Part shown: one piece after another, positions 3,964-55,320 of the stretch
Position numbering within the stretch: position 1 is the stretch's first letter
How the letters are laid out: each line of letters starts with the position of its first letter
The notes under the pieces: generated by a model
What the model saw: the letters and a program-made list of their open reading frames with translations, nothing else
Databases searched by the model: none
What the model was told of the DNA's origin: nothing
Made by a program: the position numbers and the translations under genes
IMG/VR virus record: IMGVR_UViG_3300005056_000001
Location: 62,001-126,000 of that record
Length of the DNA: 64,000 bases
Strand: one strand, 5' to 3'

Positions 3964-4986
3964 TTAGATGTTAATTTTTGCTGTTGGGTGTGTTAGCTGT
4001 ATTTTTAGGTGTGTTAGGTTTGGTGTTAGGCTGTTGTTCTCTAAACCTAAAAACTCTAGATTAGCCAAACTATCAACGTTTGGCGGAGTCGTTAATTGAT
4101 TGCCGTCTAGATATAACCACTTTAAACTTACCAATCCTTCAAGTATTGGTGGCGCAGTTAATTGATTGTCGTCTAAGTGCAAATGTCTTAACATGACCAA
4201 GCCTTCAAGTATCGGTGAAATTGTTAGTCTATTGTGGTTCAGGAATAACCGATCCAACTTTATCAAACCTTCAAGTATTGGTGGGTGATTCAGCTTGTTG
4301 TCCTCTAAATCCAACCTCTCCAAATTGACTAGACCATCAAGTATCGGTGGACGGCTCAAACTGTTGGTTGTTAAATCCAAACGCTTCAACTGTATCAAAC
4401 CTCCAAGTATTGGAGGTTCTATTAGTCGATTGTAGCTCAGATCTAAAGCCTCTAACCTGTACAATCCATTAAGAACAGGCGGGAGTGTTAGTTTGTTGTG
4501 GTTAATGTACACATGCTCTAGATTGACCAACCCCCCAAGAATGGGCGGTGTCGTTAATTTGTTGTTGGTCAAGCTTAATTTCTTCAGCTTGACCAAGCCC
4601 TCGAGGCTTGGTGGTGTAGTTAATCTGTTGTTGCTTAACACCAACCTCTTTAGGTTTACCAAACCGTTAAGAATAGGCGATGTCGATGAGGTTAGTTTAT
4701 TGTTGCTCAGATATAACTGTTCCAAATTAACCAATCCATCAAGAATTACTATGTGCTTTAGGTTGTTGTTTAAGTATAAACGCTTCAGTCTGAAAACTTG
4801 CTCAATCTTACAAAATATATCATCCGTGGCTTTAACCTTGTCATTACACAGTAGGAATTTATAGGTGTCGAGTATGTTCGGAAACACACTCAACACATCC
4901 ACGTTCCCGTTGCGAAAATTAGCCATTGCAAGATCTATATTTACATCGTCGCCTGATACTAGGAGTTGTTTTATTTTATTGTTCAT
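3964..4986 (-). CDS. LRR protein, family A (12 modules)
   Basis: Start reset to the ATG at 4986 (MNNKIKQLL), just after the upstream stop; same caps; ends THPTAKINI. Confidence 0.95.
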   Translation of the reverse strand: MNNKIKQLLVSGDDVNIDLAMANFRNGNVDVLSVFPNILDTYKFLLCNDKVKATDDIFCKIEQVFRLKRLYLNNNLKHIVILDGLVNLEQLYLSNNKLTSSTSPILNGLVNLKRLVLSNNRLTTPPSLEGLVKLKKLSLTNNKLTTPPILGGLVNLEHVYINHNKLTLPPVLNGLYRLEALDLSYNRLIEPPILGGLIQLKRLDLTTNSLSRPPILDGLVNLERLDLEDNKLNHPPILEGLIKLDRLFLNHNRLTISPILEGLVMLRHLHLDDNQLTAPPILEGLVSLKWLYLDGNQLTTPPNVDSLANLEFLGLENNSLTPNLTHLKIQLTHPTAKINI

Positions 4987-32718: not shown

Positions 32719-32728
32719 AACACAAGCA

Positions 32729-37405: not shown

Positions 37406-37413
37406 GATGTGAT

Positions 37414-38198: not shown

Positions 38199-38201
38199 GA
38201 C

Positions 38202-38284: not shown

Positions 38285-38295
38285 TAGTAAATATC

Positions 38296-39050: not shown

Positions 39051-39073
39051 ACATATCAAAACAGTACCACATT

Positions 39074-39649: not shown

Positions 39650-39672
39650 GGATATATTAAAAACATTACACC

Positions 39673-40320: not shown

Positions 40321-40401
40321 GTGTTAATATTTTGTTAAAATTGTCATTATTCTTTGATGGTGTCTAAATAAACACGTACTTGGTGTTATTAAATAATCAA
40401 A
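40319..40401 (+). repeat. 83-bp direct repeat, copy 2 (promoter module)
   Basis: Near-identical to 38202-38284. Confidence 0.95.
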
Positions 40402-40412
40402 CGGTAATTATC

Positions 40413-40850
40413 ATGAAATCGCAAAAAATAAAAGTCAACGGTATTGTTGTCCTAGAATTAGAATCGCCTCCGAAAATAGGTACCTATTACCTAAATTTCA
40501 GAGAAAGTGGAGACTTTAATTATACCATAAAGGTTGTGTCAAGCCAAACACAGATTAGTATTGTTTGTGCGTCTCGTCATGACATAACCAAGAAAATCTT
40601 CAGTGTGGAAGACATTATCCGAAAATGTTGTAGAGCAGACCTAGCCAACAACGAATTGGACTATGCAAAAATAACACAAAGCTTTTGGTTTTGGGATGTT
40701 TTTGATTATTGGCTTTTGGGCATAAAGACGTCTAGAATCTTCACGGTCACAAAGGAGAACTTTGATGATGAGGTAAATTTCTTCGTCTCCGACACGACTA
40801 GTTCCATGATCTTGTCATGTACAGACACCATTAAACGTAGCTACAAGTAA
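40413..40850 (+). CDS. hypothetical protein
   Basis: Start reset to ATG 40413 after the repeat. Confidence 0.7.
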   Translation: MKSQKIKVNGIVVLELESPPKIGTYYLNFRESGDFNYTIKVVSSQTQISIVCASRHDITKKIFSVEDIIRKCCRADLANNELDYAKITQSFWFWDVFDYWLLGIKTSRIFTVTKENFDDEVNFFVSDTTSSMILSCTDTIKRSYK

Positions 40851-41224
40851 TGGAAATATCAAAAAAAGTTAGAGACTTGTATAAGGAATTATTACACCAC
40901 AAGCGTCACACGTCTGAATACAACACGGCATTCAAGGAATTGCTACACCTAAGCAAAACAGACAGTGTGGCATTGTCTTACCTAGAACACGGAACCCCCG
41001 ACAATATCCTGAAGCTATTTAAAACTACTTATATCACGAAAGGTGAGGGTGTGACAAAAACGTTTCAAAATGTTCAATACTCACATTTTTATATGTGCGA
41101 AAATATTTTGTTCAAAATGGGCAAAGAATTAAAAAACGTCACACAGGTCAAGAAATATTTGGAGAAAAAGTACAATATCAATGGTATTATAATAAGCGAC
41201 ATGGGTGTGCACGGGAACCGATAA
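40850..41224 (+). CDS. hypothetical protein (124 aa)
   Basis: TAATG stop/start overlap. Confidence 0.7.
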   Translation: MEISKKVRDLYKELLHHKRHTSEYNTAFKELLHLSKTDSVALSYLEHGTPDNILKLFKTTYITKGEGVTKTFQNVQYSHFYMCENILFKMGKELKNVTQVKKYLEKKYNINGIIISDMGVHGNR

Positions 41225-41290
41225 TAGATTCCAAAGACAATCAAAAAAAATAACAAAGTCTTCCAATAAAAACGAGAGGGCTGCAATATA

Positions 41291-41590
41291 TTGAACATGA
41301 ACAAATGTAACGGATGCAATCGTTGTGTCAATTATAAAAGTGAGGCGACTATAAATAAAAACGTTGAGCCATGGGGTACAGACACCACCACCACCTGTAA
41401 GATTGGCAACACGACACAGATGTTGGAATGGTGGGAGAATAATGGAACGAAGATGGTTGGGGACAAATTGGACGACATGCCATGCTTTCAACAAACAGAA
41501 TTTGCAAAGAGACTTGAAAATATGTCGTCTATATTAGATGAAATCAAAGTCTCTATAATAAATGAAGGTGGTAAAAGTGCCAAAATCTAG
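41291..41590 (+). CDS. hypothetical protein (99 aa), Cys-rich N-terminus
   Basis: CNGCNRC..C..C motifs. Confidence 0.7.
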   Translation: MNMNKCNGCNRCVNYKSEATINKNVEPWGTDTTTTCKIGNTTQMLEWWENNGTKMVGDKLDDMPCFQQTEFAKRLENMSSILDEIKVSIINEGGKSAKI

Positions 41591-41660
41591 ATTGGTGGTG
41601 TCGCTGTGTTTTAATACTGTGACACATCATGGGAATGCATAGGAACCGATAATATCTTTA

Positions 41661-41737
41661 ATGGATATTTTTAATATATTGCGCTTTCATGGATATTTTT
41701 AGTATCTTGTGGTTTAGGAATATTTTTCATATCTTAC
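41661..41737 (+). promoter_or_regulatory. three tandem promoter-like units (~27-28-bp period)
   Basis: GGATATTTTTAATATATTGC / GGATATTTTTAGTATCTTGT / GGAATATTTTTCATATCTTAC upstream of the ATG at 41748. Confidence 0.55.
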
Positions 41738-41747
41738 AACATAAAAA

Positions 41748-42194
41748 ATGGACACAACAAGAATAGGTATGGGGTTCCCGTATCAAGAAATCAAAAAGGA
41801 CTTGGACGAATTATGCTCTATCAGCAACACAACCAAAGACACCAAAGACTTTTACGTGCCTAGCATAACCAAAAACCTTGTACTTATTTTTGATCACAAC
41901 AAAGACAAGGATTTGGCATGGGTCAAGGAACATTTTCCAAAGAATCAAGGGAGTGGCGACCTGTCTTTTATAGAGAATCTATTACCTCCCGACATGAAGG
42001 CGTACCACATTCATAGCTATAATTTTGTTGACCCACAAGGAGGAGAGAACAACAGAAGATTTCAGGGTGTGTTTTATTGGCCCGAATATGATGCAATAGT
42101 AAACACGCCTCCGATAGAGGTGCTAAAGAATGCCAAGAGTTTCAAGATAGACCCCTATAGCAAGGATGCTGTATTGTGGACTATTTGGTTTTAG
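41748..42194 (+). CDS. hypothetical protein (148 aa)
   Basis: ORF in run. Confidence 0.7.
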   Translation: MDTTRIGMGFPYQEIKKDLDELCSISNTTKDTKDFYVPSITKNLVLIFDHNKDKDLAWVKEHFPKNQGSGDLSFIENLLPPDMKAYHIHSYNFVDPQGGENNRRFQGVFYWPEYDAIVNTPPIEVLKNAKSFKIDPYSKDAVLWTIWF

Positions 42195-42247
42195 GTTCTT
42201 GTGTCGATATTAAACCATATTATAATTTAATTACTAAAAAAGAACCT

Positions 42248-42667
42248 ATGTACTTTGGAGAATATACAATAAATAGCAATGGTCGTTTAGAAAGTAAGTG
42301 TACCTCTATACATTTCGACATCGAAGAACTTAATGGTCGTTGGGTATCCAATCGAGACGATACTGACTCCTACATTCCTCATCAATATTCCAATGGAGAA
42401 TGCGGGGATTGGACGGCAAATTCCGACAGACTCAGCCAAGAGAATTATAAATTGTCTGACGAATTGAAACAAAAGCACTTTGGCAACAAGGGCGACTATT
42501 GGAATGGTCGTAGCAAGAAAGACATAGAGGCTTTTTTGCAAGATTTTATCGGAAACGAGACCCTTGTTTTATGCAGGGTTATTGAGTACGAAAATGCCTC
42601 TAACGGATATCCGTATTGGAGATTTGATTACTACCTTAACAACAATAGAAGAAATGAAAATAAGTAA
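42248..42667 (+). CDS. hypothetical protein
   Basis: Start reset to ATG 42248. Confidence 0.65.
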   Translation: MYFGEYTINSNGRLESKCTSIHFDIEELNGRWVSNRDDTDSYIPHQYSNGECGDWTANSDRLSQENYKLSDELKQKHFGNKGDYWNGRSKKDIEAFLQDFIGNETLVLCRVIEYENASNGYPYWRFDYYLNNNRRNENK

Positions 42668-42848
42668 CTTTTTGGAATATTTAGTGAGCGGCAAGGACAC
42701 CATGCCTACAGACAGGTCTAGGTACACATCAAAAATGTCGCAGATAAACAACAAAGAAACAAACAACGAAGATGTACTAGACAGGTCTATGTATACCTCT
42801 TTGATGTCAAAGATAAACAATGAAAAATCGAAACCGAAAGAAGCTTAG
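42654..42848 (+). CDS. small protein with a 23-aa internal repeat
   Basis: DRSRYTSKMSQINN / DRSMYTSLMSKINN; start reset to 42654. Confidence 0.6.
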   Translation: MKISNFLEYLVSGKDTMPTDRSRYTSKMSQINNKETNNEDVLDRSMYTSLMSKINNEKSKPKEA

Positions 42849-43524
42849 AAATTTAGTGTATAAAATCACACCCAATGAACTCTGTCCAATTTCAATCAAA
42901 AAAATTAGTCTATTAGAAAAGGCTAAAGCGACCGTTGTTAAATATCTCGACAGAAAACAGCCACCATACGGAATAGTACACAATGACCTTGTTGCAATTA
43001 ATCCTCTCCTAAAGGAGGTTGGAGAATCGGATTTCAATACTATAATTGGCGAAGTAAGGCTCATGATCCAAAATTCTATGGTTTACAGACCAAAGACACA
43101 GAGTTGTAACAACAATAAGTGTGGCAATCAATATAGTCATAAATATGCCAATTCCAATTATCCAAAAAAGGCACCCAAAAACCTGACACAAATTGTTTAT
43201 GATTATCTGAGCACAAAAGAAATTTCAGATTTAGGTGTCACAATAGAGAATATTTGTTATGATTTGACTATATTGCACAAACACATATTCGGACTCTTCC
43301 AAAACTTGGACAAAAAGAATATTGTATGGATGAGCAAGCGTGATTTTTCGGCATCTTATGGGGATTTTGAGGGCGGTCTTGTATTGGATAGACCCGTAAT
43401 GAAATACAGTCGTCCTGTGTGGCGTTCGATGGACTCCTATCAAGACGGTAGTCGAACATCAAGACGTTGGAATGTTAGCATGAACAAATTCAAAGAATAT
43501 ATTGACTCAAAAAATAAATCGTGA
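42820..43524 (+). CDS. hypothetical protein (234 aa)
   Basis: ORF in run. Confidence 0.7.
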   Translation: MKNRNRKKLRNLVYKITPNELCPISIKKISLLEKAKATVVKYLDRKQPPYGIVHNDLVAINPLLKEVGESDFNTIIGEVRLMIQNSMVYRPKTQSCNNNKCGNQYSHKYANSNYPKKAPKNLTQIVYDYLSTKEISDLGVTIENICYDLTILHKHIFGLFQNLDKKNIVWMSKRDFSASYGDFEGGLVLDRPVMKYSRPVWRSMDSYQDGSRTSRRWNVSMNKFKEYIDSKNKS

Positions 43525-44330: not shown

Positions 44331-45422
44331 ATGGAAACCAACACAAAAACACCGACAGTAACAGTAAACCTAGACAGCAGCGAAATGTCAAATGTTATCC
44401 TGCACAAGGTAGGAAACAAGTCAATGGACGAGGGAATGCGTATTGCAACAAACGAGCTAAAAATGACCGATGGTCTGAATGAGTCGTTGTTTAGCTATTT
44501 TGTAGGAGGATTTAAATTCGACACATTGTATGAGTTTACGGATGAGCACGACCTTTCTATGAATTCGGTATTCAAGATTTGCAAGAGAATCTTTGAAGAA
44601 ACAGACAAGGAACAAAATTTTTACAAAGGCTCTATTGATATCCTTAGACACCTCTATGATATGTCAAACAATCCCACCATTAAAGGAGGCGATCTGTATG
44701 TTGCATATTTCAATAATTGCGACTGTGACGGTGAATCGACTGATGCTATCGGAATTTTCAAGGCCGACAAGCGTGTCAATTTTGTTAATCCGAAATTTGA
44801 CGAGGACGAGAATGAATGGGCCGTGGATATTCGTGAGGGATTCGACATGACAAAAATCGACAAGGGTTGTATTATCTTCAACACCCAAGCCGAAACAGGA
44901 TATCGTATTGCCAACATCAAACTAAAAGGATTAATGGCAAGTGCATGGAATTTGGATTTCATGAACATTTCCCGTGTACAGGACGATTCTTACCAAACAC
45001 AGGTCTACATGGATATGTGCAAAGATTTTGCCAACAAGGCCTACAAAGAAGACAACAAAGACGTAAAGGTTGACTTCCTGAATCGTACCAAGGATTATTT
45101 CGAAAACTACAAAGAACATACCGACGAGGATTTCAAGGAAGTGGTGTTCGAGGACTCTGAAAAGAAAGAAGCCTTTGCGGAGCATGTCACCGAGACACGT
45201 GACAGCCTAGAACTTGAGGACGAAGACAACGGCGAATTCTTGATCTGTGCCAACACGGTAAAGAAGGCCAAAAAAGGATTCAAAAACAATATTCTGCTAG
45301 ACACCGAGGTGGAGATTAAAATCTTGTCTTCACAGGCGGTTTCTGATGGGTATGTTGAGCGTGGACACGACGACGAAAAGGACATGGACTTCTACAAGGT
45401 TTATTTTAACAGCGAGAAATAG
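44331..45422 (+). CDS. nucleoid-associated protein (37-kDa NdpA/YejK-like, Bacteroidota type)
   Basis: ILHKVGNK, LYDMSNNPTIKGGDLYVAYF, AIGIFK.D, IDKGCIIFN, W..DF, I.LD..IEIKI..ERGHDDEK..FYKVYF. Confidence 0.85.
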   Translation: METNTKTPTVTVNLDSSEMSNVILHKVGNKSMDEGMRIATNELKMTDGLNESLFSYFVGGFKFDTLYEFTDEHDLSMNSVFKICKRIFEETDKEQNFYKGSIDILRHLYDMSNNPTIKGGDLYVAYFNNCDCDGESTDAIGIFKADKRVNFVNPKFDEDENEWAVDIREGFDMTKIDKGCIIFNTQAETGYRIANIKLKGLMASAWNLDFMNISRVQDDSYQTQVYMDMCKDFANKAYKEDNKDVKVDFLNRTKDYFENYKEHTDEDFKEVVFEDSEKKEAFAEHVTETRDSLELEDEDNGEFLICANTVKKAKKGFKNNILLDTEVEIKILSSQAVSDGYVERGHDDEKDMDFYKVYFNSEK

Positions 45423-45522
45423 TTCTCGGTGTGTGCTTAAATTTTATAAAATCCTGTGTCAATATTTGTTGGTGTAGGATTTTATTTTTATATTGTGGAA
45501 ATTGATAACAAAAAAATATATT

Positions 45523-45795
45523 ATGAAAAATTTGGATTATAATGGGGCACTTAAGTTGATGACTAAATTGTCTAAGAAGAAAAACAGTGACATTGCCGTA
45601 TTTACAGACCGAGGTTGGGGAGACGACCATTCGGTAGAGAGAACATATGAAATTATCGAAGGCGGGGATGGTCAAAAGCCTTTGGGAAGTATTTCGAAAG
45701 GGACATTCGACAAACTTAGAGAAGTAGGGGTGTTGGGCGAGAATACGCTTATGTCATTTAAGGCCCGAACACTACACGACTTTAAAGGCAAGTAA
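45523..45795 (+). CDS. hypothetical protein
   Basis: Start reset to ATG 45523. Confidence 0.7.
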   Translation: MKNLDYNGALKLMTKLSKKKNSDIAVFTDRGWGDDHSVERTYEIIEGGDGQKPLGSISKGTFDKLREVGVLGENTLMSFKARTLHDFKGK

Positions 45796-45821
45796 TAAAC
45801 CGAATTATTAAAAATAAAATA

Positions 45822-46367
45822 ATGGAAAAACTAAAAATGTCCGACATATCAAAACCGCTAGATTTTAATGTCGGCTCTGTCCAATGTTTGGCACACCATG
45901 GCTCAAAACTCCTCTCGGGTCGTTACGATTTCGATTTTAATGTTTATTTACCCACAAGGGAAATGAATCTACAGCGTGAATTGGTTTGGACAGATCACCA
46001 AAAAAGTGAATTTATTAAGTCTATAATAAAAGGCATAAAGATACCACCGTTTTGTCTGATAGAAAATACCCACGAGGATGGGACTTCGTACTATGAGGTA
46101 ATCGACGGCAAACAACGCCTGAGTACCTACATTTCATTCATTAAAGGAGAATTTAATATAATGAACAATGGTATTGAATACTCAATAGATGGCTTGGACA
46201 GTAAAACATGCAATCGTGTGGAACAATGGGGAATACATGCACACATCGCATTTAGCGACCCCGAAAACAGAATCACAGACGATCAAAAAATCGCATGGTT
46301 TAGGCTAATTAATTACACCTCGACTCCACAGGAGGACATTCATCTACAGAACCTCGAAAAACAGTAG
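45822..46367 (+). CDS. stand-alone DUF262 domain protein
   Basis: LQRELVWTDHQKSEFIKSIIKG..IPPF..VIDGKQRLST. Confidence 0.88.
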   Translation: MEKLKMSDISKPLDFNVGSVQCLAHHGSKLLSGRYDFDFNVYLPTREMNLQRELVWTDHQKSEFIKSIIKGIKIPPFCLIENTHEDGTSYYEVIDGKQRLSTYISFIKGEFNIMNNGIEYSIDGLDSKTCNRVEQWGIHAHIAFSDPENRITDDQKIAWFRLINYTSTPQEDIHLQNLEKQ

Positions 46368-46399
46368 TGGTTTATAACCAAAAATATAATAAAAAGCAC

Positions 46400-46624
46400 A
46401 TGAAAAAGCTAAAAAAGGAGTTTATTGCAAAGTTAAAAAGTATTTCTATACCCGACGATGAACCCGACACATATGATTTGTTGTGGGGTGTTATTGACGA
46501 GCTCCCAAATTGTTTTGCCAAGGGTTATTTGGAGGCCCTGTTTCAGGCAGACAGTGACGAGAACGGATTGAAAGGATTAAAAAGTCGCATGTTGGACTGT
46601 GCCAAGACAAAGATATGGAAGTAA
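46400..46624 (+). CDS. hypothetical protein
   Basis: ATG 46400 (or GTG 46367). Confidence 0.65.
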   Translation: MKKLKKEFIAKLKSISIPDDEPDTYDLLWGVIDELPNCFAKGYLEALFQADSDENGLKGLKSRMLDCAKTKIWK

Positions 46625-46727
46625 TTGTTGGAACAATTGAGAATATATGCATATTGTTTTGTTGATGTGAGATTTTATGATTACATTGTGTGACTGTTAA
46701 TAACGAAATCAAGAAGTATTGAATAAT

Positions 46728-47462
46728 ATGAACGATAAAATTAAGCAATTGCTTGCATCAGGCGACGATGCAAATATAGAACTTGCAATGGCTAATTTTC
46801 GTAACGGGAATGTGGATGTACTGAGTGTTTTCCCGAATATACTGAAGACGTTCGAACTTTTGCTTTTTCACTGTATGGTTGACCATACAGATGACTTGCT
46901 TTTTAAGGTTGAGCAGGTGTTTAACATTAAGCAGTTATACTTGGATAACTTCCAACTAATTAGTCCGCCAATACTAGAAGGTTTGGTTAGGTTGGAGCGT
47001 TTGGATTTACGAAACAACCAACTGACCCAAACACCAAATCTTGAAGGATTGTTTAGGTTGGAGTGTTTGGATTTACAAAATAACCAACTGACAACCCCAC
47101 CAAATATAAAAGGATTGGTAAATTTAGAGTATTTATACCTGTGTGACAACCGACTGAAAAAGCCGCAAAACATTAAAGGATTGGTAAATTTGGAGTGGTT
47201 GTATTTGGGTAATAACCAATTGACTACTCCACCAATACTTGATGGTTTAGTAAAGCTGAAGGTATTAGATTTGAATCATAACAATTTAATCACTCCACCA
47301 ATGCTAGATGGTTTAGTAAAGCTGAAGGCATTATTTTTGGAGAATAACCAACTAACAAAACCGCTAAGTATAAAGGGATTGGTAGAACTGAAATTTTTAC
47401 ATTTACAGAACAACCCACTCAAAACAAAACCATCCCACCCAACAGCCGAAATATACATTTAA
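46728..47462 (+). CDS. LRR protein, family A (8 modules)
   Basis: MNDKIKQLLASGDDANIELAMANFRNGNVDVLSVFP; ends SHPTAEIYI. Confidence 0.95.
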   Translation: MNDKIKQLLASGDDANIELAMANFRNGNVDVLSVFPNILKTFELLLFHCMVDHTDDLLFKVEQVFNIKQLYLDNFQLISPPILEGLVRLERLDLRNNQLTQTPNLEGLFRLECLDLQNNQLTTPPNIKGLVNLEYLYLCDNRLKKPQNIKGLVNLEWLYLGNNQLTTPPILDGLVKLKVLDLNHNNLITPPMLDGLVKLKALFLENNQLTKPLSIKGLVELKFLHLQNNPLKTKPSHPTAEIYI

Positions 47463-47483
47463 AATACCAAAAAATACAATAAC

Positions 47484-48526
47484 ATGAAACCTCAAAAAAC
47501 AATCAACATACTAAATACCTACGAATTCCTACTAAAGCACGGCAAGGTCAAAGCAACAGACGATTTGTCTGTTAAGATAAAAGTACTCGAAATGGTCGTG
47601 TCGTTAGATTTAGCCTCTAAGCAGCTAACACTCATACCGTGTCTTGAGGGTTTGGTGAACTTGGTACGTTTAGACCTTAGCTACAACCAACTGACCACTC
47701 CGCCAATACTCAAAGGTTTGTGTGGCTTGAAGGTTTTACTTTTGCATAATAATCAATTGACTACGGCACCAAATCTTGAAGGTGTTGTAAGGTTAGAGTG
47801 GTTACACTTGAGTGATAATCAACTGACCTCACCACCAAACCTTGAAGGCTTGGTGAAGTTGGAGCTGTTATACTTAGACGACAATCAATTAACTGCGCCA
47901 CCAATACTTGAAGGATTGGTAAATTTAAAGTGGTTATATCTAGACGGCAATCAATTAACTACTCCGCCAATGCTTAATGGTTTGGTAAATTTGGAGCGAT
48001 TACATCTAGACGGCAATCAATTAACAACTCCGCCAATACTTAATGGATTGGTAAATTTGGAGCTGTTATACTTAGACGGCAATCAATTAACTGCGCCACC
48101 AATGGTTTGGTAAATTTGGAGCGATTACATCTAGACGGCAATCAATTAACAACTCCGCCAATACTTAATGTTTTGGTAAATTTAGAGCGATTGAAATTAA
48201 ACAGTAACAGCCTAGACAAAACACCAAATCTAGAAGGTTTAGTAAACTTGGCTTTTTTGGATCTCGGTCACAACAAATTGACGTTACAGCCAATACTAGA
48301 AGGTTTGGTTTACTTGAGAGGTTTAAGTTTGTGTCACAACCAACTAACAACCCCACCAATCCTTAAAGGTTTGGTTAATTTGGAGCGTTTATACCTGAGT
48401 CACAACAGACTAGACAGATCACCAACGCTCGATGGATTGTTGAAATTGAAGTGGTTAGACCTAGGCAACAACCCACTTAAGACAAAAACAAAACCATCCC
48501 ACCCAACAGCAGAAATTAACATTTAA
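47484..48526 (+). pseudogene. LRR gene, family A, short-cap type, split by a 7-bp deletion (14 modules when rejoined)
   Basis: CCAATGGT at 48099-48106 versus the consensus CCAATACTTAATGGT; joins ORFs 47484-48113 and 48107-48526. Confidence 0.88.
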
Positions 48527-48539
48527 AATAAAACGCAGA

Positions 48540-48815
48540 ATGTTTAATATTATAATAGCTTTCATATTTGGTGCAATCGCAGCCACGATCATCCAACACA
48601 TTAAAAAGACCGACACAAGACCCAAACCCCCTGTCATTAAAAACGACATATTGGAACTTGGAATAAGGTTACGGTCAAAACACATAACAGAGGAGGCGAT
48701 TAAGGACATGTACTCACTAAAGCCGTTTATATCAGAGGAAGAATTTACGTATCTTCAGAATAAGGTAAGACCGTCTGTTATAGCAAGATTCAACAAAACA
48801 TTAAATAATTTTTAA
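48540..48815 (+). CDS. small membrane-anchored protein (91 aa)
   Basis: N-terminal hydrophobic helix. Confidence 0.7.
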   Translation: MFNIIIAFIFGAIAATIIQHIKKTDTRPKPPVIKNDILELGIRLRSKHITEEAIKDMYSLKPFISEEEFTYLQNKVRPSVIARFNKTLNNF

Positions 48816-48827
48816 ATAACAAAAAGA

Positions 48828-49187
48828 ATGAGTGAATTAAAATTAGAAGGAAAGATTGTTGCCATAATGGAAAAGAAGCAAGTCACCGACACATTTGCCA
48901 CACGTGAGTTTGTGATTGAAACAGATGAACAATATCCACAAATGGTCAAATTCCAACTGACCCAAGCCAAATGTGAGGACATCGACAATCACAAGGTTGG
49001 TGACGAGCTTAATGTCCATTTTAATATGCGTGGGCGCAAATGGACAAACAGAGAAAATGAGGACGTATATTTCATTAGTGCAAATGCATGGCGATTGGAG
49101 GCCCTGAACACTGCACCAACCCAATCTGCACCAACGCCCGAAAGCGAGCCGCCTGCCGATAGTTTTGCGGACGACTTGCCGTTTTAG
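48828..49187 (+). CDS. DUF3127 family OB-fold (SSB-like) protein
   Basis: FATREFVIET.EQYPQMVKFQLTQ..GDELNVHFNMRGRKW..AWRLE, acidic tail DDLPF; typical of Bacteroidota. Confidence 0.92.
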   Translation: MSELKLEGKIVAIMEKKQVTDTFATREFVIETDEQYPQMVKFQLTQAKCEDIDNHKVGDELNVHFNMRGRKWTNRENEDVYFISANAWRLEALNTAPTQSAPTPESEPPADSFADDLPF

Positions 49188-49194
49188 GAAAGGT

Positions 49195-49236
49195 AATAAA
49201 CCATGCTCTACTCGGGGGTATGGTTTATTTCTTTTT
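49195..49236 (+). terminator. rho-independent terminator
   Basis: AATAAACCATGCTC / GGGTATGGTTTATT stem followed by TCTTTTT. Confidence 0.75.
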
Positions 49237-49310
49237 AAGACTTATTGAATAATGTGAGGATGTTGTGATTTTTTTGTATATTACGACATTGCTTCATTTA
49301 AATATATATT

Positions 49311-49835
49311 ATGACATGTAGATTATTAAAGCTAAAGGATGATATGACAAAAAATCATATTGATTCAGAAGGTATATCATCTAGAATTTTTAAAAACAAC
49401 CTTACTGCACAATATAGCATTAGATCATTATTCCGAAATGTTGTTGCATTGGAGGTGTACGTCAACCTAAACACAAGCTTTGTGGTTGAATTTCATATTC
49501 CACAGACATATATAGGTAGCGTTCCGCTTGAAGTAGAATTCTGTATTAATGAGATATATCAAAACCCCCTGAGTAAGGAACTCGTATCGTGTATTAATGA
49601 CACCGAAGTTCCTCTAATAAAATCTTACAAGGTAGTGCGTGGTGTTGCGTCTCGTTATGGTTCAAACGTGTCCGAACTACTTAAGGGTATTGACGAGAAA
49701 ATGCCCATGTTAGAAAACATACTAATGGCGGCACTTAGGAGCAGAATCGAAATAAACACACGAAAAGAATCCATAAAAAGTAATCTTGAAAGATTGGAAA
49801 AAGAATATTGTGTTTTAAAATTGAAAAAACAATAA
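49311..49835 (+). CDS. hypothetical protein (174 aa)
   Basis: ORF in run. Confidence 0.7.
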   Translation: MTCRLLKLKDDMTKNHIDSEGISSRIFKNNLTAQYSIRSLFRNVVALEVYVNLNTSFVVEFHIPQTYIGSVPLEVEFCINEIYQNPLSKELVSCINDTEVPLIKSYKVVRGVASRYGSNVSELLKGIDEKMPMLENILMAALRSRIEINTRKESIKSNLERLEKEYCVLKLKKQ

Positions 49836-49836
49836 A

Positions 49837-50379
49837 ATGACAAAGAAAAACTTTAAAAAACCTATACACCTTGCCGCAAGTGATGGGAACGAATACAGGG
49901 CAATGGATTATCTCCATTTTGAGGACGGCAACATTGTGGCCACAGACGGACATGTGATTGTTGTTCAGGCATTGTCTTTGCATGGGTTCACAGAGGACGA
50001 GGTTCTGCTTATGGAGGGTATGGCCATACATCGCAAGGAATTCAAGGGTCTCATGGGATATACACATGTGACTGTAACCAAAAATGGTTTTGTGTGTTTA
50101 AAGGGCGAGACCGAGACCATTATCCCACTCAAGCCATTGTCCGAACAAACAGACGAAAGGTTTGTCAATTACAAAAATCAGTTCTATGGTGTTAGGGCAG
50201 ATGAAAAGATTAGCGAAATAGGACTAAATTTGGACTTGTTGTCACGCATTAAAAAAATGACAATGAACAATCTTGGACATGTAAATATTACCTTTAAGCA
50301 CAACGGAAAGGTTTGTTTGATTAAGGGCGTGGACATAGAAGGAGAGCAATTTCTGCTAATGTCGCTTGAGCCGCAATAG
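49837..50379 (+). CDS. DNA polymerase III beta-clamp-like protein (partial domain set)
   Basis: IVATDGHVIV, FVNYKNQF, IGLNLDLL motifs echo beta-clamp domains 2-3; only 180 aa. Confidence 0.55.
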   Translation: MTKKNFKKPIHLAASDGNEYRAMDYLHFEDGNIVATDGHVIVVQALSLHGFTEDEVLLMEGMAIHRKEFKGLMGYTHVTVTKNGFVCLKGETETIIPLKPLSEQTDERFVNYKNQFYGVRADEKISEIGLNLDLLSRIKKMTMNNLGHVNITFKHNGKVCLIKGVDIEGEQFLLMSLEPQ

Positions 50380-50423
50380 CTTTGGTATTTATCGTATAAT
50401 TAAACAGTAACAAAAAACAAAAA

Positions 50424-51254
50424 ATGAAAACACTTAAAAAGATGTTATGGCACCTGCTTGGGATTATTAGTCAAGAGGTGCGCTTGTGCAAAGTCCTAGA
50501 AATTACACCACAGCATATTGCCATTGCGATGTTATTGGACAAGGAAAAAGGATTGTTCCAAACACGAATGTTTGAACACGAAATCCTGACAAAGCTCTGT
50601 CTAAAAGATGGTGACCTGCTACGTCTTACACTCACTAGATACCACGGAGAAATCAGGTTTAGATTCGATGGAATGATACTTGGGTATTTCTTGAGAAAAG
50701 AAGACAAGAAGTTATACGAGATGGTCAAGAATTACTCCGAGAAGCCGCATGATGTGGTTATTAAGGATGTTCTTTCTGATCCTATGTTTGATGTGCTGAA
50801 GGGCGAGAAGGCACATATCGAGGACGAATCAAAGCCTTTGTTTGATAGTGATGGTACTGATAGAATGTTCTCTGACCCGCCGTTTGAAAGTTGTAAAATG
50901 ATTGATACTAAGAGTGCTTTTTATAAAGGCAAAAAAACCATGCAAAACACTGTTTCCCTAGGAGTCTTAAACGAGGAGCAGAAAGGGTTCGTGGCGTTCT
51001 GTAATAAGTTGGGCTTTTTTGTTTCGACACTGAGCAATACAGAAGGGAGTAATGTATATTATACAACCCTTAAATATAATTGGAAATTGTACAATGTCCC
51101 GAAAGAAAGTAAAGAAATCACAAACGGATATCGTGGCTTTGGGGGTACAATCGAATTCTTAATGGAGGCGATAACCATATTTCATGAGAACGAGGATAGT
51201 CACTTTCAGATATTCGACAGTGTTTATTTAAAAAACAACCAAGACAATGTTTAA
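50424..51254 (+). CDS. hypothetical protein (276 aa)
   Basis: ORF in run. Confidence 0.7.
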   Translation: MKTLKKMLWHLLGIISQEVRLCKVLEITPQHIAIAMLLDKEKGLFQTRMFEHEILTKLCLKDGDLLRLTLTRYHGEIRFRFDGMILGYFLRKEDKKLYEMVKNYSEKPHDVVIKDVLSDPMFDVLKGEKAHIEDESKPLFDSDGTDRMFSDPPFESCKMIDTKSAFYKGKKTMQNTVSLGVLNEEQKGFVAFCNKLGFFVSTLSNTEGSNVYYTTLKYNWKLYNVPKESKEITNGYRGFGGTIEFLMEAITIFHENEDSHFQIFDSVYLKNNQDNV

Positions 51255-51711
51255 GTATACAGAAAAAGTTAAAGTAAAACACACGGCAAGTATAAAGACT
51301 ATTGTTTCGGCATGTCTTGTGGATTGTCAGTTTAAGATAACCCAAGACCTTGTCGAGTCCTTGGGCTCCGAAAGTGTGTGCGACAACATTAAATTATTGC
51401 AGAACATATGCAACACACACGAGTTGGCAGAGGGTTTTGACATTGCCTCACACATGAAAGATTTTGACTGTTTTTCAAATTCGTTACTCGAAATAGTAAA
51501 ACATGCAATCCCTGCTTATTTAAACCATCTACTCGGATTGTTAGAATGGACAAGTTTTCAGGACAAAAAAGTCCATGATGCACTGTTCGAATCCTTGTAT
51601 GATGTAAATACCATAAACCATCTTGGTGCATCTTGTCTTTTGGCTACTATACGTGAAAGTCATCACACACTTCAGGTATTCGAGCTAGAGCAAATTACAT
51701 TGGGTGAATAA
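51247..51711 (+). CDS. hypothetical protein (154 aa)
   Basis: Overlaps the upstream stop. Confidence 0.7.
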   Translation: MFKYTEKVKVKHTASIKTIVSACLVDCQFKITQDLVESLGSESVCDNIKLLQNICNTHELAEGFDIASHMKDFDCFSNSLLEIVKHAIPAYLNHLLGLLEWTSFQDKKVHDALFESLYDVNTINHLGASCLLATIRESHHTLQVFELEQITLGE

Positions 51712-51753
51712 AACAACAATAAATAACTTTCCACAAAACGTTAAAATTATGTT

Positions 51754-51788
51754 AAAGTCCTGCACATTTATTGTGTAGGACTTTTTTT
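51754..51788 (+). terminator. rho-independent terminator embedded in a promoter module
   Basis: AAAGTCCTGCACA / TGTGTAGGACTTT stem followed by a T-run. Confidence 0.8.
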
Positions 51789-51846
51789 ATTCGGATTTTA
51801 TTTGTAATATTGGGGTATCAATTAATAACGACATTAAACAACAACA

Positions 51847-52410
51847 ATGAGAATTAAAATAGACGGCAATTATTTTGATATTCCTAGTGAAGGAATGATT
51901 ACATTTAAAACGATTGACATAAGAAATCATTTTAATTATTCCACGTGTGATATTGATATGCACGTGGATAAGGGTGCGATATATAAATGTGACATATATA
52001 GCATAAGAAATATATCCCTACGAAGAACAAGGCTACGGAATGTGTTGTTGGGTCAGATCATTGAACAGGGTATTTTTGTTGAGGTTATTGAGCCAACAAC
52101 CAAGGGTAGCGAGTTTACTATCCGATACAGCAACAATAACCCATATGCCGATTTAATTGCCGACTTGATGGAGGTCGAGAAATACAACAAGAGCAGAGGC
52201 TTTAGAAGGTTCCTGTCAATGGACTCCGACACTATCGAATTTGAATTCTATGGAAGTCAGGGGTGCCGTAATTATGCCTCGGCTATGCATGCAAGTGACA
52301 TCATAGATTGCATCAAAGACAAAACAGGCAAGACTCCACAATGGAACCGCCAAAAAAGTTGGGACAGCAACAGCCTAACACATGCATATAATTTTAAAAT
52401 TACGCTATAA
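51847..52410 (+). CDS. hypothetical protein (187 aa)
   Basis: First gene after a promoter module. Confidence 0.7.
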   Translation: MRIKIDGNYFDIPSEGMITFKTIDIRNHFNYSTCDIDMHVDKGAIYKCDIYSIRNISLRRTRLRNVLLGQIIEQGIFVEVIEPTTKGSEFTIRYSNNNPYADLIADLMEVEKYNKSRGFRRFLSMDSDTIEFEFYGSQGCRNYASAMHASDIIDCIKDKTGKTPQWNRQKSWDSNSLTHAYNFKITL

Positions 52411-53075
52411 TGAAAAATCCACACAAGCAGGCAGACATGAACAGGCTATCCGAACTCCTAAAGTCGGGAAACAAGGAGAATATAGAGCTCGCCTTTCAAT
52501 TAACCGAATCAAACAACATCGGACTAGATTTATTTGGATGGTGCATGCTATCGGAGTGGCTATACAGGTTTTGGGTTATCGGACACTATAAACCCCTAGA
52601 GGAGGCAATTATCATGATCGGTGAAATTCGGGAGTTGGTAATCGTAGACGAGAACCTGTTAAAAGTCCCTCGTTATATTGGTCTCATGTCCAATTTAACA
52701 TCCATACATTTTAGGTCTAGCCGTCTTAATAAATTGCCAAAAGAAATAGGAGATTTGCCTAACATCAAAGATTTAACTGTGGTGGGTGGCAGCTTTTCCG
52801 AATTTCCTTCCACATTTTCCAATATGAATAATTTGGAGCATCTTTGTTTAAACGATCTTGGACTAGATGTGGTTCCTGATTTTATTTGCAAGACTCCTAG
52901 TATAAAAAGGTTGTTTTTGGAAACCAACAAAATAACCGAGATACCAAAAGACATCGAAAATATTACATCCTTGGAAGAACTATTTTTGCATGGTAATCTT
53001 ATTAAAGAATTTCCAAGGACTATAGGCAGTCTTAAATGTATTGGTGCAAACAAAGGCAGTTATTCGAATTATTAG
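52410..53075 (+). CDS. LRR protein, family B with helical N-cap
   Basis: LLKSGNKENIELAFQL cap; 23-aa LP.EIG.L repeats. Confidence 0.92.
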   Translation: MKNPHKQADMNRLSELLKSGNKENIELAFQLTESNNIGLDLFGWCMLSEWLYRFWVIGHYKPLEEAIIMIGEIRELVIVDENLLKVPRYIGLMSNLTSIHFRSSRLNKLPKEIGDLPNIKDLTVVGGSFSEFPSTFSNMNNLEHLCLNDLGLDVVPDFICKTPSIKRLFLETNKITEIPKDIENITSLEELFLHGNLIKEFPRTIGSLKCIGANKGSYSNY

Positions 53076-53111
53076 AACAACTGTCCCTAACCATTTAATA
53101 CCTAGTAAAAT

Positions 53112-53804
53112 ATGAAGGACTCCGACAAGCTACTCAATCTAATAAATTCGGGTGTAAAGGAAAATATTGAGCTCGCCTTTCAGTTGCACAAATCCAATGG
53201 TATACCATTGGATTTGTGGGCATGGTCAGAACTTGCCGAATGGCTGTATAAATATCGACTAATAAAATCCTACAAGTCGTTGGAAGAGGCGATTGTTAAG
53301 ATTTTCGACATACGAGAGGTATATGTGACAAGTGATTTACTAGAAAACATAACAGAGCATATCGGTCTTATGGTCGGCTTGGAATGTATTAGTTTTATAT
53401 CCAAGAAGGTAACCACACTGCCCGATAGTATATCAAAACTAACACACCTAAAATATATCATCCTATACGGTTGCAATATAAAAACCCTGCCAAAATCCAT
53501 GTCAATGCTCACGAATCTTGTTAGTATTGACATGGATAGCAATGGAATGAAAGATCTACCCTCCGAAGTCTGTGATATCCCTAACCTTGAGAATTTGGAG
53601 ATTAGGTTCAACGATTTAACAACACTCCCCAAGAACATTGGAAATTTAAAAAAGCTAAAAAAGCTAAAACTTCAGGGCAATAAAATGGCGGTTCTTCCGA
53701 AATCTATTTGTATGCTACAATCACTAAAAGGACTTATGGCCAACGATACCTATATCACAATTGACGAGTTGGTACCCGATCAGGATGTGATTCTATTGTG
53801 TTAA
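53112..53804 (+). CDS. LRR protein, family B
   Basis: LINSGVKENIELAFQL cap; 23-aa repeats. Confidence 0.92.
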   Translation: MKDSDKLLNLINSGVKENIELAFQLHKSNGIPLDLWAWSELAEWLYKYRLIKSYKSLEEAIVKIFDIREVYVTSDLLENITEHIGLMVGLECISFISKKVTTLPDSISKLTHLKYIILYGCNIKTLPKSMSMLTNLVSIDMDSNGMKDLPSEVCDIPNLENLEIRFNDLTTLPKNIGNLKKLKKLKLQGNKMAVLPKSICMLQSLKGLMANDTYITIDELVPDQDVILLC

Positions 53805-53901
53805 TGTTTTGTTAAGACGCATTGGTTTTGGTGATATATTTTGTTTATTCGGATTTTATTTGTAATATTGTACTATCAATTAATGATTAACAAACAAGGA
53901 T

Positions 53902-54615
53902 ATGGTAACCACGGAACAACAAGAAGACATAGACAAGATAACATCACTCTTAAAATCGGGTGATAGTGCCAATATAGAGCTTGCATTCATGCTTATAAGT
54001 TCTAATAAATTAAGGATTTGTTTGTGGGCATGGGGCGACCTATCTGTGTATTTGCGAAACCATGGCGATTTGGGCAAATACAAAACATTCAATGATGGCA
54101 TTAGGAGAATAGGAGAAATGCGTGAACTCGCATTAAGACAAGGAAACCTTCACGGATTAGGTTCTTGTTTTTCATTCATGCCTTATTTGACAGGGCTTCA
54201 TTTGACACAATACAAGGACATAACACTTCCCGAAAATATAACAGAAATACACAATCTTAAATATATCGTTTTTGATGGATGTATAATAGAATCCTTGCCC
54301 AAAGGAATATCCACATTAAAAAACATTGTTCGTATAGACATTGACTGTCATAATATGAATGCGCTCCCGAAAGGAATATGCACCATCCCCAATCTTGAGA
54401 CATTGACCATTAGATTTAGCAAGCTCACAAGCCTCCCAAATAATATTGGAGACCTAAAACACCTTAAAAAGTTGGTGATTGACGGCAAACAAATCGAGTC
54501 ACTTCCTGAATCCATCAACCGCCTAGGAAACTTGACGGAAATTATTGTCAAGAATGGCATTGTCGATATTAGTAATTTGGCTCCTAATATAATTGACTTG
54601 ATTAAAACTGCTTAG
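53902..54615 (+). CDS. LRR protein, family B
   Basis: LLKSGDSANIELAFML cap; 23-aa repeats. Confidence 0.92.
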   Translation: MVTTEQQEDIDKITSLLKSGDSANIELAFMLISSNKLRICLWAWGDLSVYLRNHGDLGKYKTFNDGIRRIGEMRELALRQGNLHGLGSCFSFMPYLTGLHLTQYKDITLPENITEIHNLKYIVFDGCIIESLPKGISTLKNIVRIDIDCHNMNALPKGICTIPNLETLTIRFSKLTSLPNNIGDLKHLKKLVIDGKQIESLPESINRLGNLTEIIVKNGIVDISNLAPNIIDLIKTA

Positions 54616-54618
54616 AAC

Positions 54619-55320
54619 ATGAAGGACACACAAAAGATATGGGACTTGATCTATACGGCCCAAGAAGTAAATATAAACCTTGCGTTTACCTTGGCAGAGG
54701 CCAAAGGAATAGCATTAGATTTAAGTGCGTATCACGAGATTTTCGGGTGGTTACAGACCCATGAAACCGAGACTACAGAACATAAATCAGACCTAGAAAT
54801 ATTGATATATGTATTGACACTAGAAACGGTGACAGTGCCCTGTAAAGGACTGACCGAAATACCAAAATCAATAGGAAAACTTAGATCGCTTAAATGTCTT
54901 ATTTTGGGGTGGAATAAATTGACATACCTTCCTGATTCAATCGGAGAATTGAGCAACCTAGGAATGTTGCATGTCTTAGGAAACAAACTCACAAACCTGC
55001 CCGACACAATCGGGAATCTAACATTATTAGAATATCTATACGTTGGCGGTAACCAATTAACAGAACTTCCCGAAACGATTGGTGGTCTTAAAAATCTAAC
55101 AGAATTGTGCGTCAATAATAATAGATTGGAAACCATTCCAAAGACTATACTAAACCTAAAATATTTAGAAAAGATTGACATCAAAATGAACAACATAAAA
55201 GATATTCCTGACAGGCTTGGTTATCTTCCAAACCTGCGATGGTTACATCTTGGCAAAAAAGTATCCGAGAAGGTGAAAAACAACCTTACAAGCAACAAGA
55301 ACACAAATTGGTATGACTGA
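54619..55320 (+). CDS. LRR protein, family B
   Basis: LIYTAQEVNINLAFTL cap; LPDSIGEL-type repeats. Confidence 0.92.
   Translation: MKDTQKIWDLIYTAQEVNINLAFTLAEAKGIALDLSAYHEIFGWLQTHETETTEHKSDLEILIYVLTLETVTVPCKGLTEIPKSIGKLRSLKCLILGWNKLTYLPDSIGELSNLGMLHVLGNKLTNLPDTIGNLTLLEYLYVGGNQLTELPETIGGLKNLTELCVNNNRLETIPKTILNLKYLEKIDIKMNNIKDIPDRLGYLPNLRWLHLGKKVSEKVKNNLTSNKNTNWYD

What the first reader, a model, noticed from the sequence alone, without database searches (positions are those of the whole stretch)
47859..48170. Intragenic mosaic modules and a microhomology deletion in the longest LRR gene
Seen: 47976-48045 is identical to 48101-48170 (70 bp; offset 125 = 2x66 - 7). 47859-47905 matches 48057-48103 with one mismatch (offset 198 = 3x66), and that mismatch (GAC to GGC) is the state of the neighbouring modules, so the module is chimeric. 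The frameshift at ~48101 removes 7 bp between two AAT trimers (CCAATacttaatGGT to CCAATGGT). Inference: recent unequal recombination or slippage built this array, and an imprecise junction split it into an 8-module capped part and a 6-module part that can restart at ATG 48102-region/GTA-adjacent 48107.
Basis: partly seen in the sequence, partly recalled or inferred. Interest (0 to 1): 0.7.

Follow-up and report, generated by a model that had tools for sequence, protein, structure and literature searches.

The report
Recently duplicated, frameshifted phage LRR gene
One of ten leucine-rich-repeat genes in a 368-kb phage from sub-seafloor fluids recently copied three of its 22-residue modules and lost bases at the new joint, which splits the gene in two; this is the ordinary way repeat genes grow and die, caught unusually early.

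Summary
The repeats are real. 47976-48045 equals 48101-48170 (70/70). 47859-47905 matches 48057-48103 at 46/47. Module 48048-48106 is 59 nt instead of 66. Among 3741 module pairs of the family, mean identity is 59.5% and the 99.9th percentile of exact runs is 27 nt.

The gene (47484-48526) is one of ten SDS22/internalin-type LRR paralogs, each with its own N-cap and C-tail, in a 368,109-bp tailed jumbo phage from North Pond crustal fluid.

The best history is a 198-nt (three-module) tandem duplication followed by a 73-nt deletion at a 3-nt AAT overlap. The net gain is 125 nt, which shifts the frame by -1. A bare 7-nt deletion fits less well.

The result is ORF1 (209 aa, no C-cap) and a tail ORF (139 codons) with only TTG starts in a random-like context. 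This looks like a nascent pseudogene, not two working halves.

Three assemblies, probably of one read set, carry the same joint. One of them has an N-gap inside the 70-nt repeat. No reads covering the joint could be obtained.

The family also shows an in-frame module duplication, a 97/99 conversion tract between paralogs 43 kb apart, and a second frameshifted member. The mechanism is ordinary and interest is modest.

The parts
47484..48113 (+). ORF1 of the broken LRR paralog 'J' (209 aa): short-type N-cap, seven full 22-residue LRR modules and the truncated eighth. It ends ..LTAPPMVW-stop out of register and has no C-cap.
   Evidence: (LRR_4 E 8.2e-25); start context 10.8 bits
48107..48526 (+). 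Tail ORF of 'J' (139 codons from the first TTG; the frame is open from 48044). It holds six modules, the last being the family C-cap ending PSHPTAEINI. It lies in the -1 frame relative to ORF1.
   Evidence: (LRR_4 E 1.2e-20); no ATG or GTG, only TTG candidates with random-like context
47859..48056 (+). First copy of the inferred 198-nt (three-module) duplication unit, spanning m05 (from its 10th base), m06, m07 and the first 9 nt of the next module.
48057..48181 (+). Second copy, 125 nt left after the internal loss. 48057-48103 matches 47859-47905 (46/47). 48104-48181 matches 47979-48056 (76/78; the two mismatches are at 48171-48172).
48048..48106 (+). Short chimeric module m08 (59 nt instead of 66). 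Its first 16 nt are as in m07/m09, its core is m05-specific, the G at 48079 is as in m06/m07, and its last 6 nt are as in m06.
48101..48103 (+). The joint: an AAT shared by both flanking tracts (3-nt microhomology). The frame changes here.
47976..48045 (+). 70-nt exact repeat, copy 1 (last 6 nt of m06 plus the first 64 nt of m07).
48101..48170 (+). 70-nt exact repeat, copy 2 (end of m08 plus m09). The ENA scaffold of the same phage has a 100-N gap at 48155, inside this copy.
47872..47970 (+). Tract shared at 97/99 with paralog B on the other strand (4080-4178), set in flanks of about 60% identity. This is an inter-paralog conversion or module-exchange tract.
4080..4178 (-). Partner tract in paralog B (gene 3964-4986, minus strand).

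Best explanation
The locus is paralog 'J' of a ten-member family of small LRR proteins (22-residue, SDS22/internalin-type repeats) in a 368-kb tailed jumbo phage from sub-seafloor crustal fluid. Each member has a helical N-cap, 5-12 modules and a conserved C-terminal cap ending P-[TS]-H-P-T-A-x-I-x-I. Shown: J very recently gained a second, near-identical copy of the block m05-m07, and the new copy lacks 73 nt of that block. Its first module is therefore 59 nt long and the frame shifts by -1. Inferred mechanism: a misaligned exchange or template switch three modules out of register duplicated 198 nt. A second slip between two AAT trimers, or a second jump in the same replication event, then removed 73 nt from the unstable new copy. 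Consequence (inferred): translation from the good start at 47484 stops at TAA 48111 and gives a 209-aa LRR protein without the family C-cap. The 139-codon tail has no credible start of its own. J is therefore a nascent pseudogene or truncated allele, too young to have collected further lesions. The same family shows the rest of the birth-and-death cycle. It has an in-frame one-module duplication (H), short conversion tracts between distant paralogs (B/J, C/D), and a second member broken by a missing base (F). Variable residues sit on the predicted concave binding face, so the family is most likely a set of fast-evolving binders of host or defence proteins. The target is unknown.
For: Repeats and the short module. 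Far above background: mean 59.5% identity; 99.9th percentile of exact runs 27 nt; 4th longest exact repeat in the genome. The 198/73 model: copy 2 matches copy 1 at 122/125, with 12/29 and 7/20 mismatches just outside, and only m06 ends in AATGGT. The J span is 1043 nt (2 mod 3) and the new copy is 125 nt. Both halves align to consecutive parts of intact paralogs, and only the tail carries the C-cap. Start signals: phage genes have A-rich, G-poor leaders without Shine-Dalgarno cores. ORF1's start scores 10.8 bits, while tail candidates score -0.3 to -2.9 against a random mean of -2.6. Same joint and same split gene calls (209 + 139 aa) in JGI 3300005056, JGI 3300029927 (L071, 0 differences over 9487 nt) and ENA ERZ23495903. 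The data are Illumina HiSeq (PMC4776111). Family dynamics: H 40006-40158 at 84/87 with offset 66, B/J at 97/99, C/D at 118/122; F split and also present in all three assemblies. Fold: AlphaFold2 model of paralog H has pLDDT 95.8 with strands every 22 residues; the best Foldseek hits are SDS22, designed LRRs, VLRs, Leptospira LRR proteins and internalins. Highest entropy lies at module positions 8, 9, 11, 13 and 14, the x positions of LxxLxLxxN. Phage identity: Terminase_6N is present and no NCLDV capsid is found.
Against: No read-level evidence. The public runs that hold this phage are kept only as short contigs, and none of them covers 47400-48350. The three assemblies are probably re-assemblies of one 2012 read set, so they are independent in method but not in sample. 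One of them breaks inside the 70-nt repeat at 48155. This shows the repeat is hard to thread and that the copy number of the 125-nt unit is not certain. No ortholog exists in any searchable collection to polarise the events, and records near the window may be masked in those searches. Three mismatches between the copies (48079, 48171-48172) need later change or short-patch conversion. Whether the truncated protein is made, folds or works was not tested.
Confidence: 0.7

Rival explanations
1. Assembly artefact: the repeat array was mis-threaded or collapsed, and the true gene is intact.
For: The ENA scaffold has a 100-N gap at 48155 inside the 70-nt repeat, and further gaps at the two other exact repeats of 62 nt or more (32713, 40138). 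The source paper describes shearing to 175 bp, less than the 195-nt repeat-spacer-repeat unit. No reads could be laid on the joint.
Against: The joint has only 3 nt of overlap, so a k-mer graph cannot create it without reads that contain it (inference). The unique spacer 48046-48100 is flanked on both sides by sequence found only in this gene. Three assemblies with different fragmentation all contain the joint, and two thread the whole array identically. The data are Illumina, not an indel-prone platform. Extra copies of the 125-nt unit would still leave the 59-nt module and the broken frame.
Confidence: 0.08
2. One reading: a 7-nt deletion between two AAT trimers in an otherwise complete inserted module, with the tail re-initiated at about 48102-48107, so that two half-proteins are made.
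For: m08 is exactly 7 nt short of a module. TTG 48107 overlaps the ORF1 stop (TTGGTAA), a geometry that can allow termination-reinitiation (own knowledge).
Against: The three bases after the joint (GGT) match only the m06 end. A 7-nt loss from an m05 or m07 end would leave GGA. An m05-like module next to an m07 copy needs a further event that the 198/73 model does not. ATG 48102 is in the ORF1 frame. The TTG candidates have random-like context in a genome whose real starts are strongly A-rich. The tail lacks the N-cap and ORF1 lacks the C-cap, while all eight intact paralogs have both.
Confidence: 0.12
3. Programmed -1 ribosomal frameshifting, or another recoding event, joins the two ORFs. This could be a regulatory feature shared with the second split paralog F.
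For: Both split paralogs need a -1 shift. The J overlap (48044-48113) contains an X XXY YYZ heptamer, AAATTTG, at 48053.
Against: The same heptamer is part of the module consensus (G-L-V-N-L) and occurs in frame in intact paralogs A, C and I and elsewhere in J. The F overlap has none. A shift at 48053 would replace an LRR module with 16 out-of-frame residues. There is no homopolymer that could support transcriptional slippage. Both lesions are plainly missing bases relative to sister modules.
Confidence: 0.03
4. The broken allele is real but is only one variant in a mixed phage population. The consensus hides intact alleles with other module numbers.
For: Fresh tandem duplications are unstable (own knowledge). 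The assembly graph breaks at the repeat in one assembly. The family shows ongoing module gain elsewhere.
Against: There is no difference between the three assemblies over 19 kb, and no alternative contig was found by exact-protein look-ups of five flanking genes. These tests cannot see minor variants.
Confidence: 0.15

Closest known systems
SDS22-like / internalin-type LRR proteins (22-residue repeats; e.g. human SDS22, Listeria InlA/InlC2, Leptospira LIC10831)
   Same: The period is 66 nt, or 22 residues. The module consensus is L-[ED]-G-L-V-N-L-x-x-L-x-L-x-x-N-Q-L-T-T-P-P-x. Pfam LRR_4, LRR_8 and LRR_1 match. The predicted solenoid with a helical N-cap has SDS22, designed LRRs, LIC10831 and InlA among its best Foldseek hits.
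   Different: The gene is phage-encoded. No signal peptide is visible. There is no Ig-like inter-repeat domain or wall anchor, because the protein ends right after the last repeat. The N-cap found no relative among 1.84 billion representative proteins. The C-tail P-[TS]-H-P-T-A-x-I-x-I was not seen in 54 LRR loci fetched from other viruses and metagenomes.
LRR multigene families that evolve by unequal crossing-over and gene conversion (Listeria internalin genes, plant Cf/Xa21/NLR clusters; own knowledge)
   Same: Module-number change occurs in multiples of the repeat (198 nt in J, 66 nt in H). Short mosaic tracts occur between paralogs (B/J 97/99, C/D 118/122). Some members are broken (J, F). 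Variability is concentrated on the concave face.
   Different: The family sits in a virus of bacteria. The paralogs lie in four clusters on both strands within 45 kb. The J lesion is an out-of-register joint with only 3 nt of overlap.
Lamprey/hagfish VLR assembly from LRR cassettes (own knowledge; VLRs are among the fold hits)
   Same: LRR modules are copied between loci over short homologies, giving mosaic arrays.
   Different: There is no evidence of a dedicated or programmed process, of an incomplete germline gene flanked by cassettes, or of a deaminase. Only two or three tracts were seen in one consensus genome.
Programmed -1 frameshift genes of phages (tail assembly chaperone G/GT; own knowledge)
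   Same: Two overlapping ORFs lie in a 0/-1 relation.
   Different: There is no specific slippery site, and the lesion is visibly a loss of bases relative to sister modules.

Membership tests
Leucine-rich repeat proteins (Pfam clan LRR) | Significant match to LRR profiles above the curated cut-off | tested here: met
   LRR_4 scores 86.7 bits (cut-off 27) for ORF1 and 73.5 bits for the tail ORF. LRR_8 and LRR_1 are also above their cut-offs.
SDS22-like (22-residue) LRR class | Repeat length of 22 residues with LxxLxLxxNxL and a solenoid fold like SDS22 or internalin | tested here: met
   Period 66 nt. Consensus and entropy per position. Model of paralog H has pLDDT 95.8 with strands every 22 residues. 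Foldseek top hits are SDS22 6obn_C (E 1.2e-8) and 6mky.
Listeria-type internalins | N-terminal signal peptide, and an Ig-like inter-repeat domain after the LRRs | tested here: not met
   The translations start with a polar helical cap and end 10 residues after the last repeat. No further domain appears in Pfam. No signal-peptide predictor was run; this was judged from the sequence.
Frameshift pseudogene of a paralog family | Two adjacent ORFs in different frames that align to consecutive parts of intact paralogs, with a definable indel at the break | tested here: met
   module m08 is 59 nt, ORF1 holds the N-cap and modules 1-8, and the tail holds modules 9-14 with the C-cap.
Frameshift pseudogene of a paralog family | The break is present in the molecules, not only in one assembly | tested here: inconclusive
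   The same joint is in three assemblies. These probably come from one read set, and no reads cover the joint.
Tandem duplication by unequal (out-of-register) recombination | Near-identical copies at an offset that is a whole number of repeat units, with identity dropping at the unit borders | tested here: met
   Offset 198 = 3 x 66. 122/125 identity inside the copy, with 12/29 and 7/20 mismatches just outside.
Programmed -1 ribosomal frameshift | A slippery heptamer specific to the overlap that gives a sensible fused product | tested here: not met
   AAATTTG at 48053 is a module-consensus heptamer also present in intact genes, and the F overlap has none. A fusion there would carry 16 out-of-frame residues.
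Independently translated second cistron | A start codon with the genome's usual initiation context | tested here: not met
   only TTG candidates, scoring -0.3 to -2.9 bits against a random mean of -2.6. Real starts of the family score 2.3 to 11.2.

The most novel reading that the evidence does not exclude
The phage uses its LRR paralogs as a recombination-driven diversification set. Modules are swapped between expressed and silent or broken copies (F, J) by short conversion tracts, so binding specificities against host or defence proteins change quickly, in a cassette-like way resembling antigenic variation or VLR assembly. The fresh duplication and out-of-frame joint in J would then be a by-product of that high exchange rate.
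Probability: 0.1. Interest if true: 0.7.

Novelty: new member of a known kind. Interest (0 to 1): 0.3.

Why it matters
On its own the finding is a textbook case of how repeat arrays expand and break, so it does not open a new question. Its value is as a dated snapshot. The duplication, the out-of-frame joint, an in-frame duplication in a sister gene and conversion tracts between paralogs 43 kb apart are all visible in one clonal jumbo-phage genome. This shows that the phage's large, lineage-specific LRR family is turning over now. It marks the family as a candidate for fast-evolving phage-host interaction proteins, and it marks positions 8, 9, 11, 13 and 14 of each module as the likely binding face. 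For annotation, 47484-48526 and 38296-39050 should be flagged as disrupted genes rather than as four separate small proteins.

Tried and rejected
- Read support: two searches for runs and two read-laying runs were used. Only three Logan contigs of 151-175 nt from one seawater run lie on 48360-48942, and nothing lies on the joint.
- Orthologs to polarise the events: the search for homologous proteins with ORF1 gave at best 50% identity, on generic LRR proteins. Viral contigs by protein and by the exact joint gave two distant loci and no exact match. Metagenome contigs gave 52 loci of at most 56% identity, mostly 32-50%. The phage collection by megablast gave nothing. Records near the window may be masked in these tools.
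- N-cap profile against 1.84 billion representatives: only the phage's own F1 product was found.
- Regex scan of the fetched loci for the family N-cap and C-tail motifs: none found.
- ESM Atlas on the N-cap: scores of at most 0.81 and helical-bundle look-alikes with TM of at most 0.58. These are leads only.
- blastn of the gene against the window merged the repeats into long low-identity HSPs and was replaced by ungapped window scans.
- Supplement look-up to learn which sample 3300029927 re-assembles: not held.
- Literature on LRR proteins in jumbo phages: nothing specific to this family.
- I did not read the gene through the break or build any mended version. The halves were analysed separately.

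Full report
**What is there.** The window is bases 62001-126000 of a 368,109-bp virus record with 99-nt direct terminal repeats. The genome encodes a Terminase_6N large terminase and no NCLDV capsid, so it is a tailed jumbo phage. The same contig is JGI Ga0071102_1000001. That is the 2012 metagenome of cold, oxic crustal fluid from borehole U1383C (shallow) at North Pond on the Mid-Atlantic Ridge flank, sequenced on Illumina HiSeq (PMC4776111).

Around the finding lie early and DNA-metabolism genes: an NA37 nucleoid protein, GmrSD_N, a DUF3127 single-strand-binding protein and a RusA-like resolvase. Gene starts in this genome have A-rich, G-poor leaders, and Shine-Dalgarno cores are depleted (3% against 9% at random). 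From my own knowledge this is the Bacteroidota style of initiation and hints at the host.

- 47976-48045 and 48101-48170 are identical over 70 nt, and the identity stops sharply at both ends.
- 47859-47905 and 48057-48103 differ only at 47881/48079 (A/G).
- In 66-nt register the gene has 14 modules. The eighth (48048-48106) has 59 nt.
- ORF 47484-48113 (209 aa) therefore runs into TAA at 48111. The rest of the array, down to the stop at 48524-48526, is open in the -1 frame from 48044.
- This is not chance. The 87 modules of the ten paralogs give 3741 pairs with mean identity 59.5%. The 99.9th percentile is 57/66 for identity and 27 nt for the longest exact run.
- In 44-nt windows the best match elsewhere is usually 28-37/44. 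It reaches 43-44/44 only across 47859-48188.
- The 70-mer is the fourth longest exact direct repeat of the whole genome.

**The family.** All ten paralogs lie in the window.

| Paralog | Coordinates | Strand |
|---|---|---|
| A | 3045-3911 | - |
| B | 3964-4986 | - |
| C | 7031-7972 | - |
| D | 8002-9000 | - |
| E | 37512-38198 | + |
| F | 38296-39050 | + |
| G | 39074-39649 | + |
| H | 39673-40320 | + |
| I | 46728-47462 | + |
| J | 47484-48526 | + |

- All share a helical N-cap. A-F and I have a long form, and G, H and J have a short form.
- They have 5-12 modules with the consensus L-[ED]-G-L-V-N-L-x-x-L-x-L-x-x-N-Q-L-T-T-P-P-x.
- They end in a C-terminal cap, P-[TS]-H-P-T-A-x-I-x-I, directly before the stop.
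- Entropy is highest at module positions 8, 9, 11, 13 and 14. These are the x positions of LxxLxLxxN that line the concave face in LRR structures (the structural meaning is established knowledge).
- An AlphaFold2 model of H is confident (pLDDT 95.8, pTM 0.91). It has two N-terminal helices, strands every 22 residues and a last strand in the C-tail.
- Its best solved look-alikes are SDS22, designed LRRs and repebodies, VLRs, Leptospira LRR proteins and internalins.
- The N-cap has no relative among 1.84 billion representative proteins other than the phage's own F product. The ESM Atlas gave only weak leads. The family is thus a lineage-specific wrapping around a generic SDS22-type solenoid. It is not an internalin, because it has no signal peptide and no inter-repeat domain.

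**How the array was built.**
- m09 (48107-48172) is a copy of m07, and the six bases before it (AATGGT) are the end of m06.
- The core of m08 is m05-specific. Its first 9 nt are what follows m07.
- If 47859-48056 (198 nt, three modules) is taken as the unit, the second copy is 48057-48181. That copy lacks the equivalent of 47906-47978 (73 nt).
- What remains matches at 122/125. The mismatches are at 48079 and 48171-48172.
- Identity collapses just outside: 12/29 mismatches on the right and 7/20 on the left.
- The two sides of the loss share only AAT.
- A 7-nt loss from an m05-type or m07-type end would leave GGA, not the observed GGT. It would also need an extra event to put an m05 copy next to an m07 copy.
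- I therefore read the history as a 198-nt out-of-register duplication followed by a 73-nt deletion, or as two template jumps in one replication pass.
- The net gain is 125 nt in a span of 1043 nt (2 mod 3).
Point change and short-patch conversion cannot be told apart here.

**Consequence.**
- ORF1 keeps the N-cap and a strong start (10.8 bits; the 99th percentile of random sites is 6.8). It lacks the C-cap that all eight intact paralogs have.
- The tail has the C-cap but no N-cap, no ATG and no GTG. Its TTG candidates score -0.3 to -2.9 bits, like random sequence (mean -2.6).
- ATG 48102 is in the ORF1 frame.
- Programmed -1 frameshifting is not supported. The only X XXY YYZ heptamer in the overlap (AAATTTG, 48053) is part of the module consensus and also stands in intact paralogs. 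A shift there would give 16 out-of-frame residues, and the second split gene has no such site.
- The most likely state is a nascent pseudogene or truncated allele. No further lesions are expected yet, because the copies are still almost identical.

**Is it real?** Reads could not be obtained. The only runs that hold the phage are stored as short contigs, and none lies on 47400-48350. Exact-protein look-ups did find two further assemblies.
- JGI 3300029927, a re-assembly used by Seyler et al., has contigs of 12.9 and 9.5 kb. They are identical to the window over 45329-54815 and 33681-43155. They thread the whole J array the same way and carry the same 209- and 139-aa gene calls.
- The ENA scaffold MEYE16-2 scaffold_3 (368,684 bp) is also identical. 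It has 100-N gaps at the AAAAC microsatellite (32713), inside the exact repeat of H (40138) and inside the second 70-mer of J (48155).
- All three contain the joint at 48101-48103. A joint with 3 nt of overlap cannot arise from mis-threading a k-mer graph (inference). Extra copies of the 125-nt unit would not mend the frame.
- The assemblies probably share one read set, so minor intact alleles or a library artefact are not excluded.

**The rest of the family shows the same processes.**
- H carries an in-frame one-module duplication (40006-40092 against 40072-40158, 84/87, including 68 exact).
- J 47872-47970 matches B 4080-4178 on the other strand at 97/99, inside flanks of about 60% identity. 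This is a conversion tract between genes 43 kb apart.
- C and D share 118/122 at their 5' ends.
- F is also split. One base is missing at the C-run 38552-38554, which separates the N-cap with the first repeat (93 aa) from seven repeats and the C-cap. This too is present in all three assemblies.
- Both broken genes end in M-V-W-stop. That is because the shifted reading of the conserved ..ATGGTTTGGTAAAT.. runs into TAA.

**Verdict.** The mechanism, unequal recombination and slippage in a repeat array producing a frameshifted copy, is well known from internalin genes and plant LRR clusters (own knowledge). The interest is therefore modest. The less ordinary part is the setting: a large orphan-capped LRR family in a sub-seafloor jumbo phage that is visibly exchanging and losing modules.

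Noticed in passing
window 38296-38577 and 38514-39050: A second LRR paralog (F) is split by a -1 frameshift. One base appears to be missing at the C-run 38552-38554, which separates the N-cap plus first repeat (93 aa, ending ..LMVW-stop) from seven repeats plus the C-cap. The identical sequence is in all three assemblies.
   Followed up: partly
window 40006-40158 (gene H, 39673-40320): An in-frame tandem duplication of one 66-nt module (84/87, including 68 exact) gives two identical 22-residue repeats. The ENA scaffold has an N-gap at 40138 inside it.
   Followed up: partly
window 47872-47970 (+) and 4080-4178 (-): A 97/99 identical tract lies between paralogs J and B, 43 kb apart and inverted, within flanks of about 60% identity. 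It looks like gene conversion or module exchange. The direction is unknown.
   Followed up: partly
window 7851-7972 (-) and 8879-9000 (-): The 5' ends (N-cap) of the adjacent paralogs C and D are 118/122 identical, much more alike than their repeat regions.
   Followed up: no
window 38190-38300 and 40307-40416: The ~100-nt intergenic stretches after genes E and H are about 93% identical (57 nt exact). This may be a shared promoter or terminator element ahead of the next gene.
   Followed up: no
window 11659-13434 (-) and 52410-56437 (+): A second, different LRR family (phrog_6688, weak LRR_14/LRR_8 hits) has at least seven members. The phage thus carries about 17 or more LRR genes within 64 kb.
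   Followed up: no
window 32654-32725: An AAAAC x 14 microsatellite lies in an intergenic region at the switch between the minus-strand and plus-strand gene blocks. It is an N-gap in the ENA scaffold.
   Followed up: no
whole genome (G000): Gene starts have A-rich, G-poor leaders (A 55-66% at -14 to -3, 71% at -3). Shine-Dalgarno cores are depleted (11 of 343 genes against 9% at random). This suggests a Bacteroidota-like host.
   Followed up: partly
all LRR modules, e.g. window 48102-48113: The conserved ..GGTTTGGTAAAT.. (G-L-V-N) reads as ..V-W-stop after the loss of one base. Any such frameshift in these genes is therefore stopped within one module, a built-in hidden stop.
   Followed up: no
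window 24700-28866 (-): The 1388-aa ORF is an SbcC-like / metallophosphoesterase protein (phrog_35725, E 3e-72), not a tape measure. An NAD-dependent DNA ligase lies at 34225-36384.
   Followed up: no
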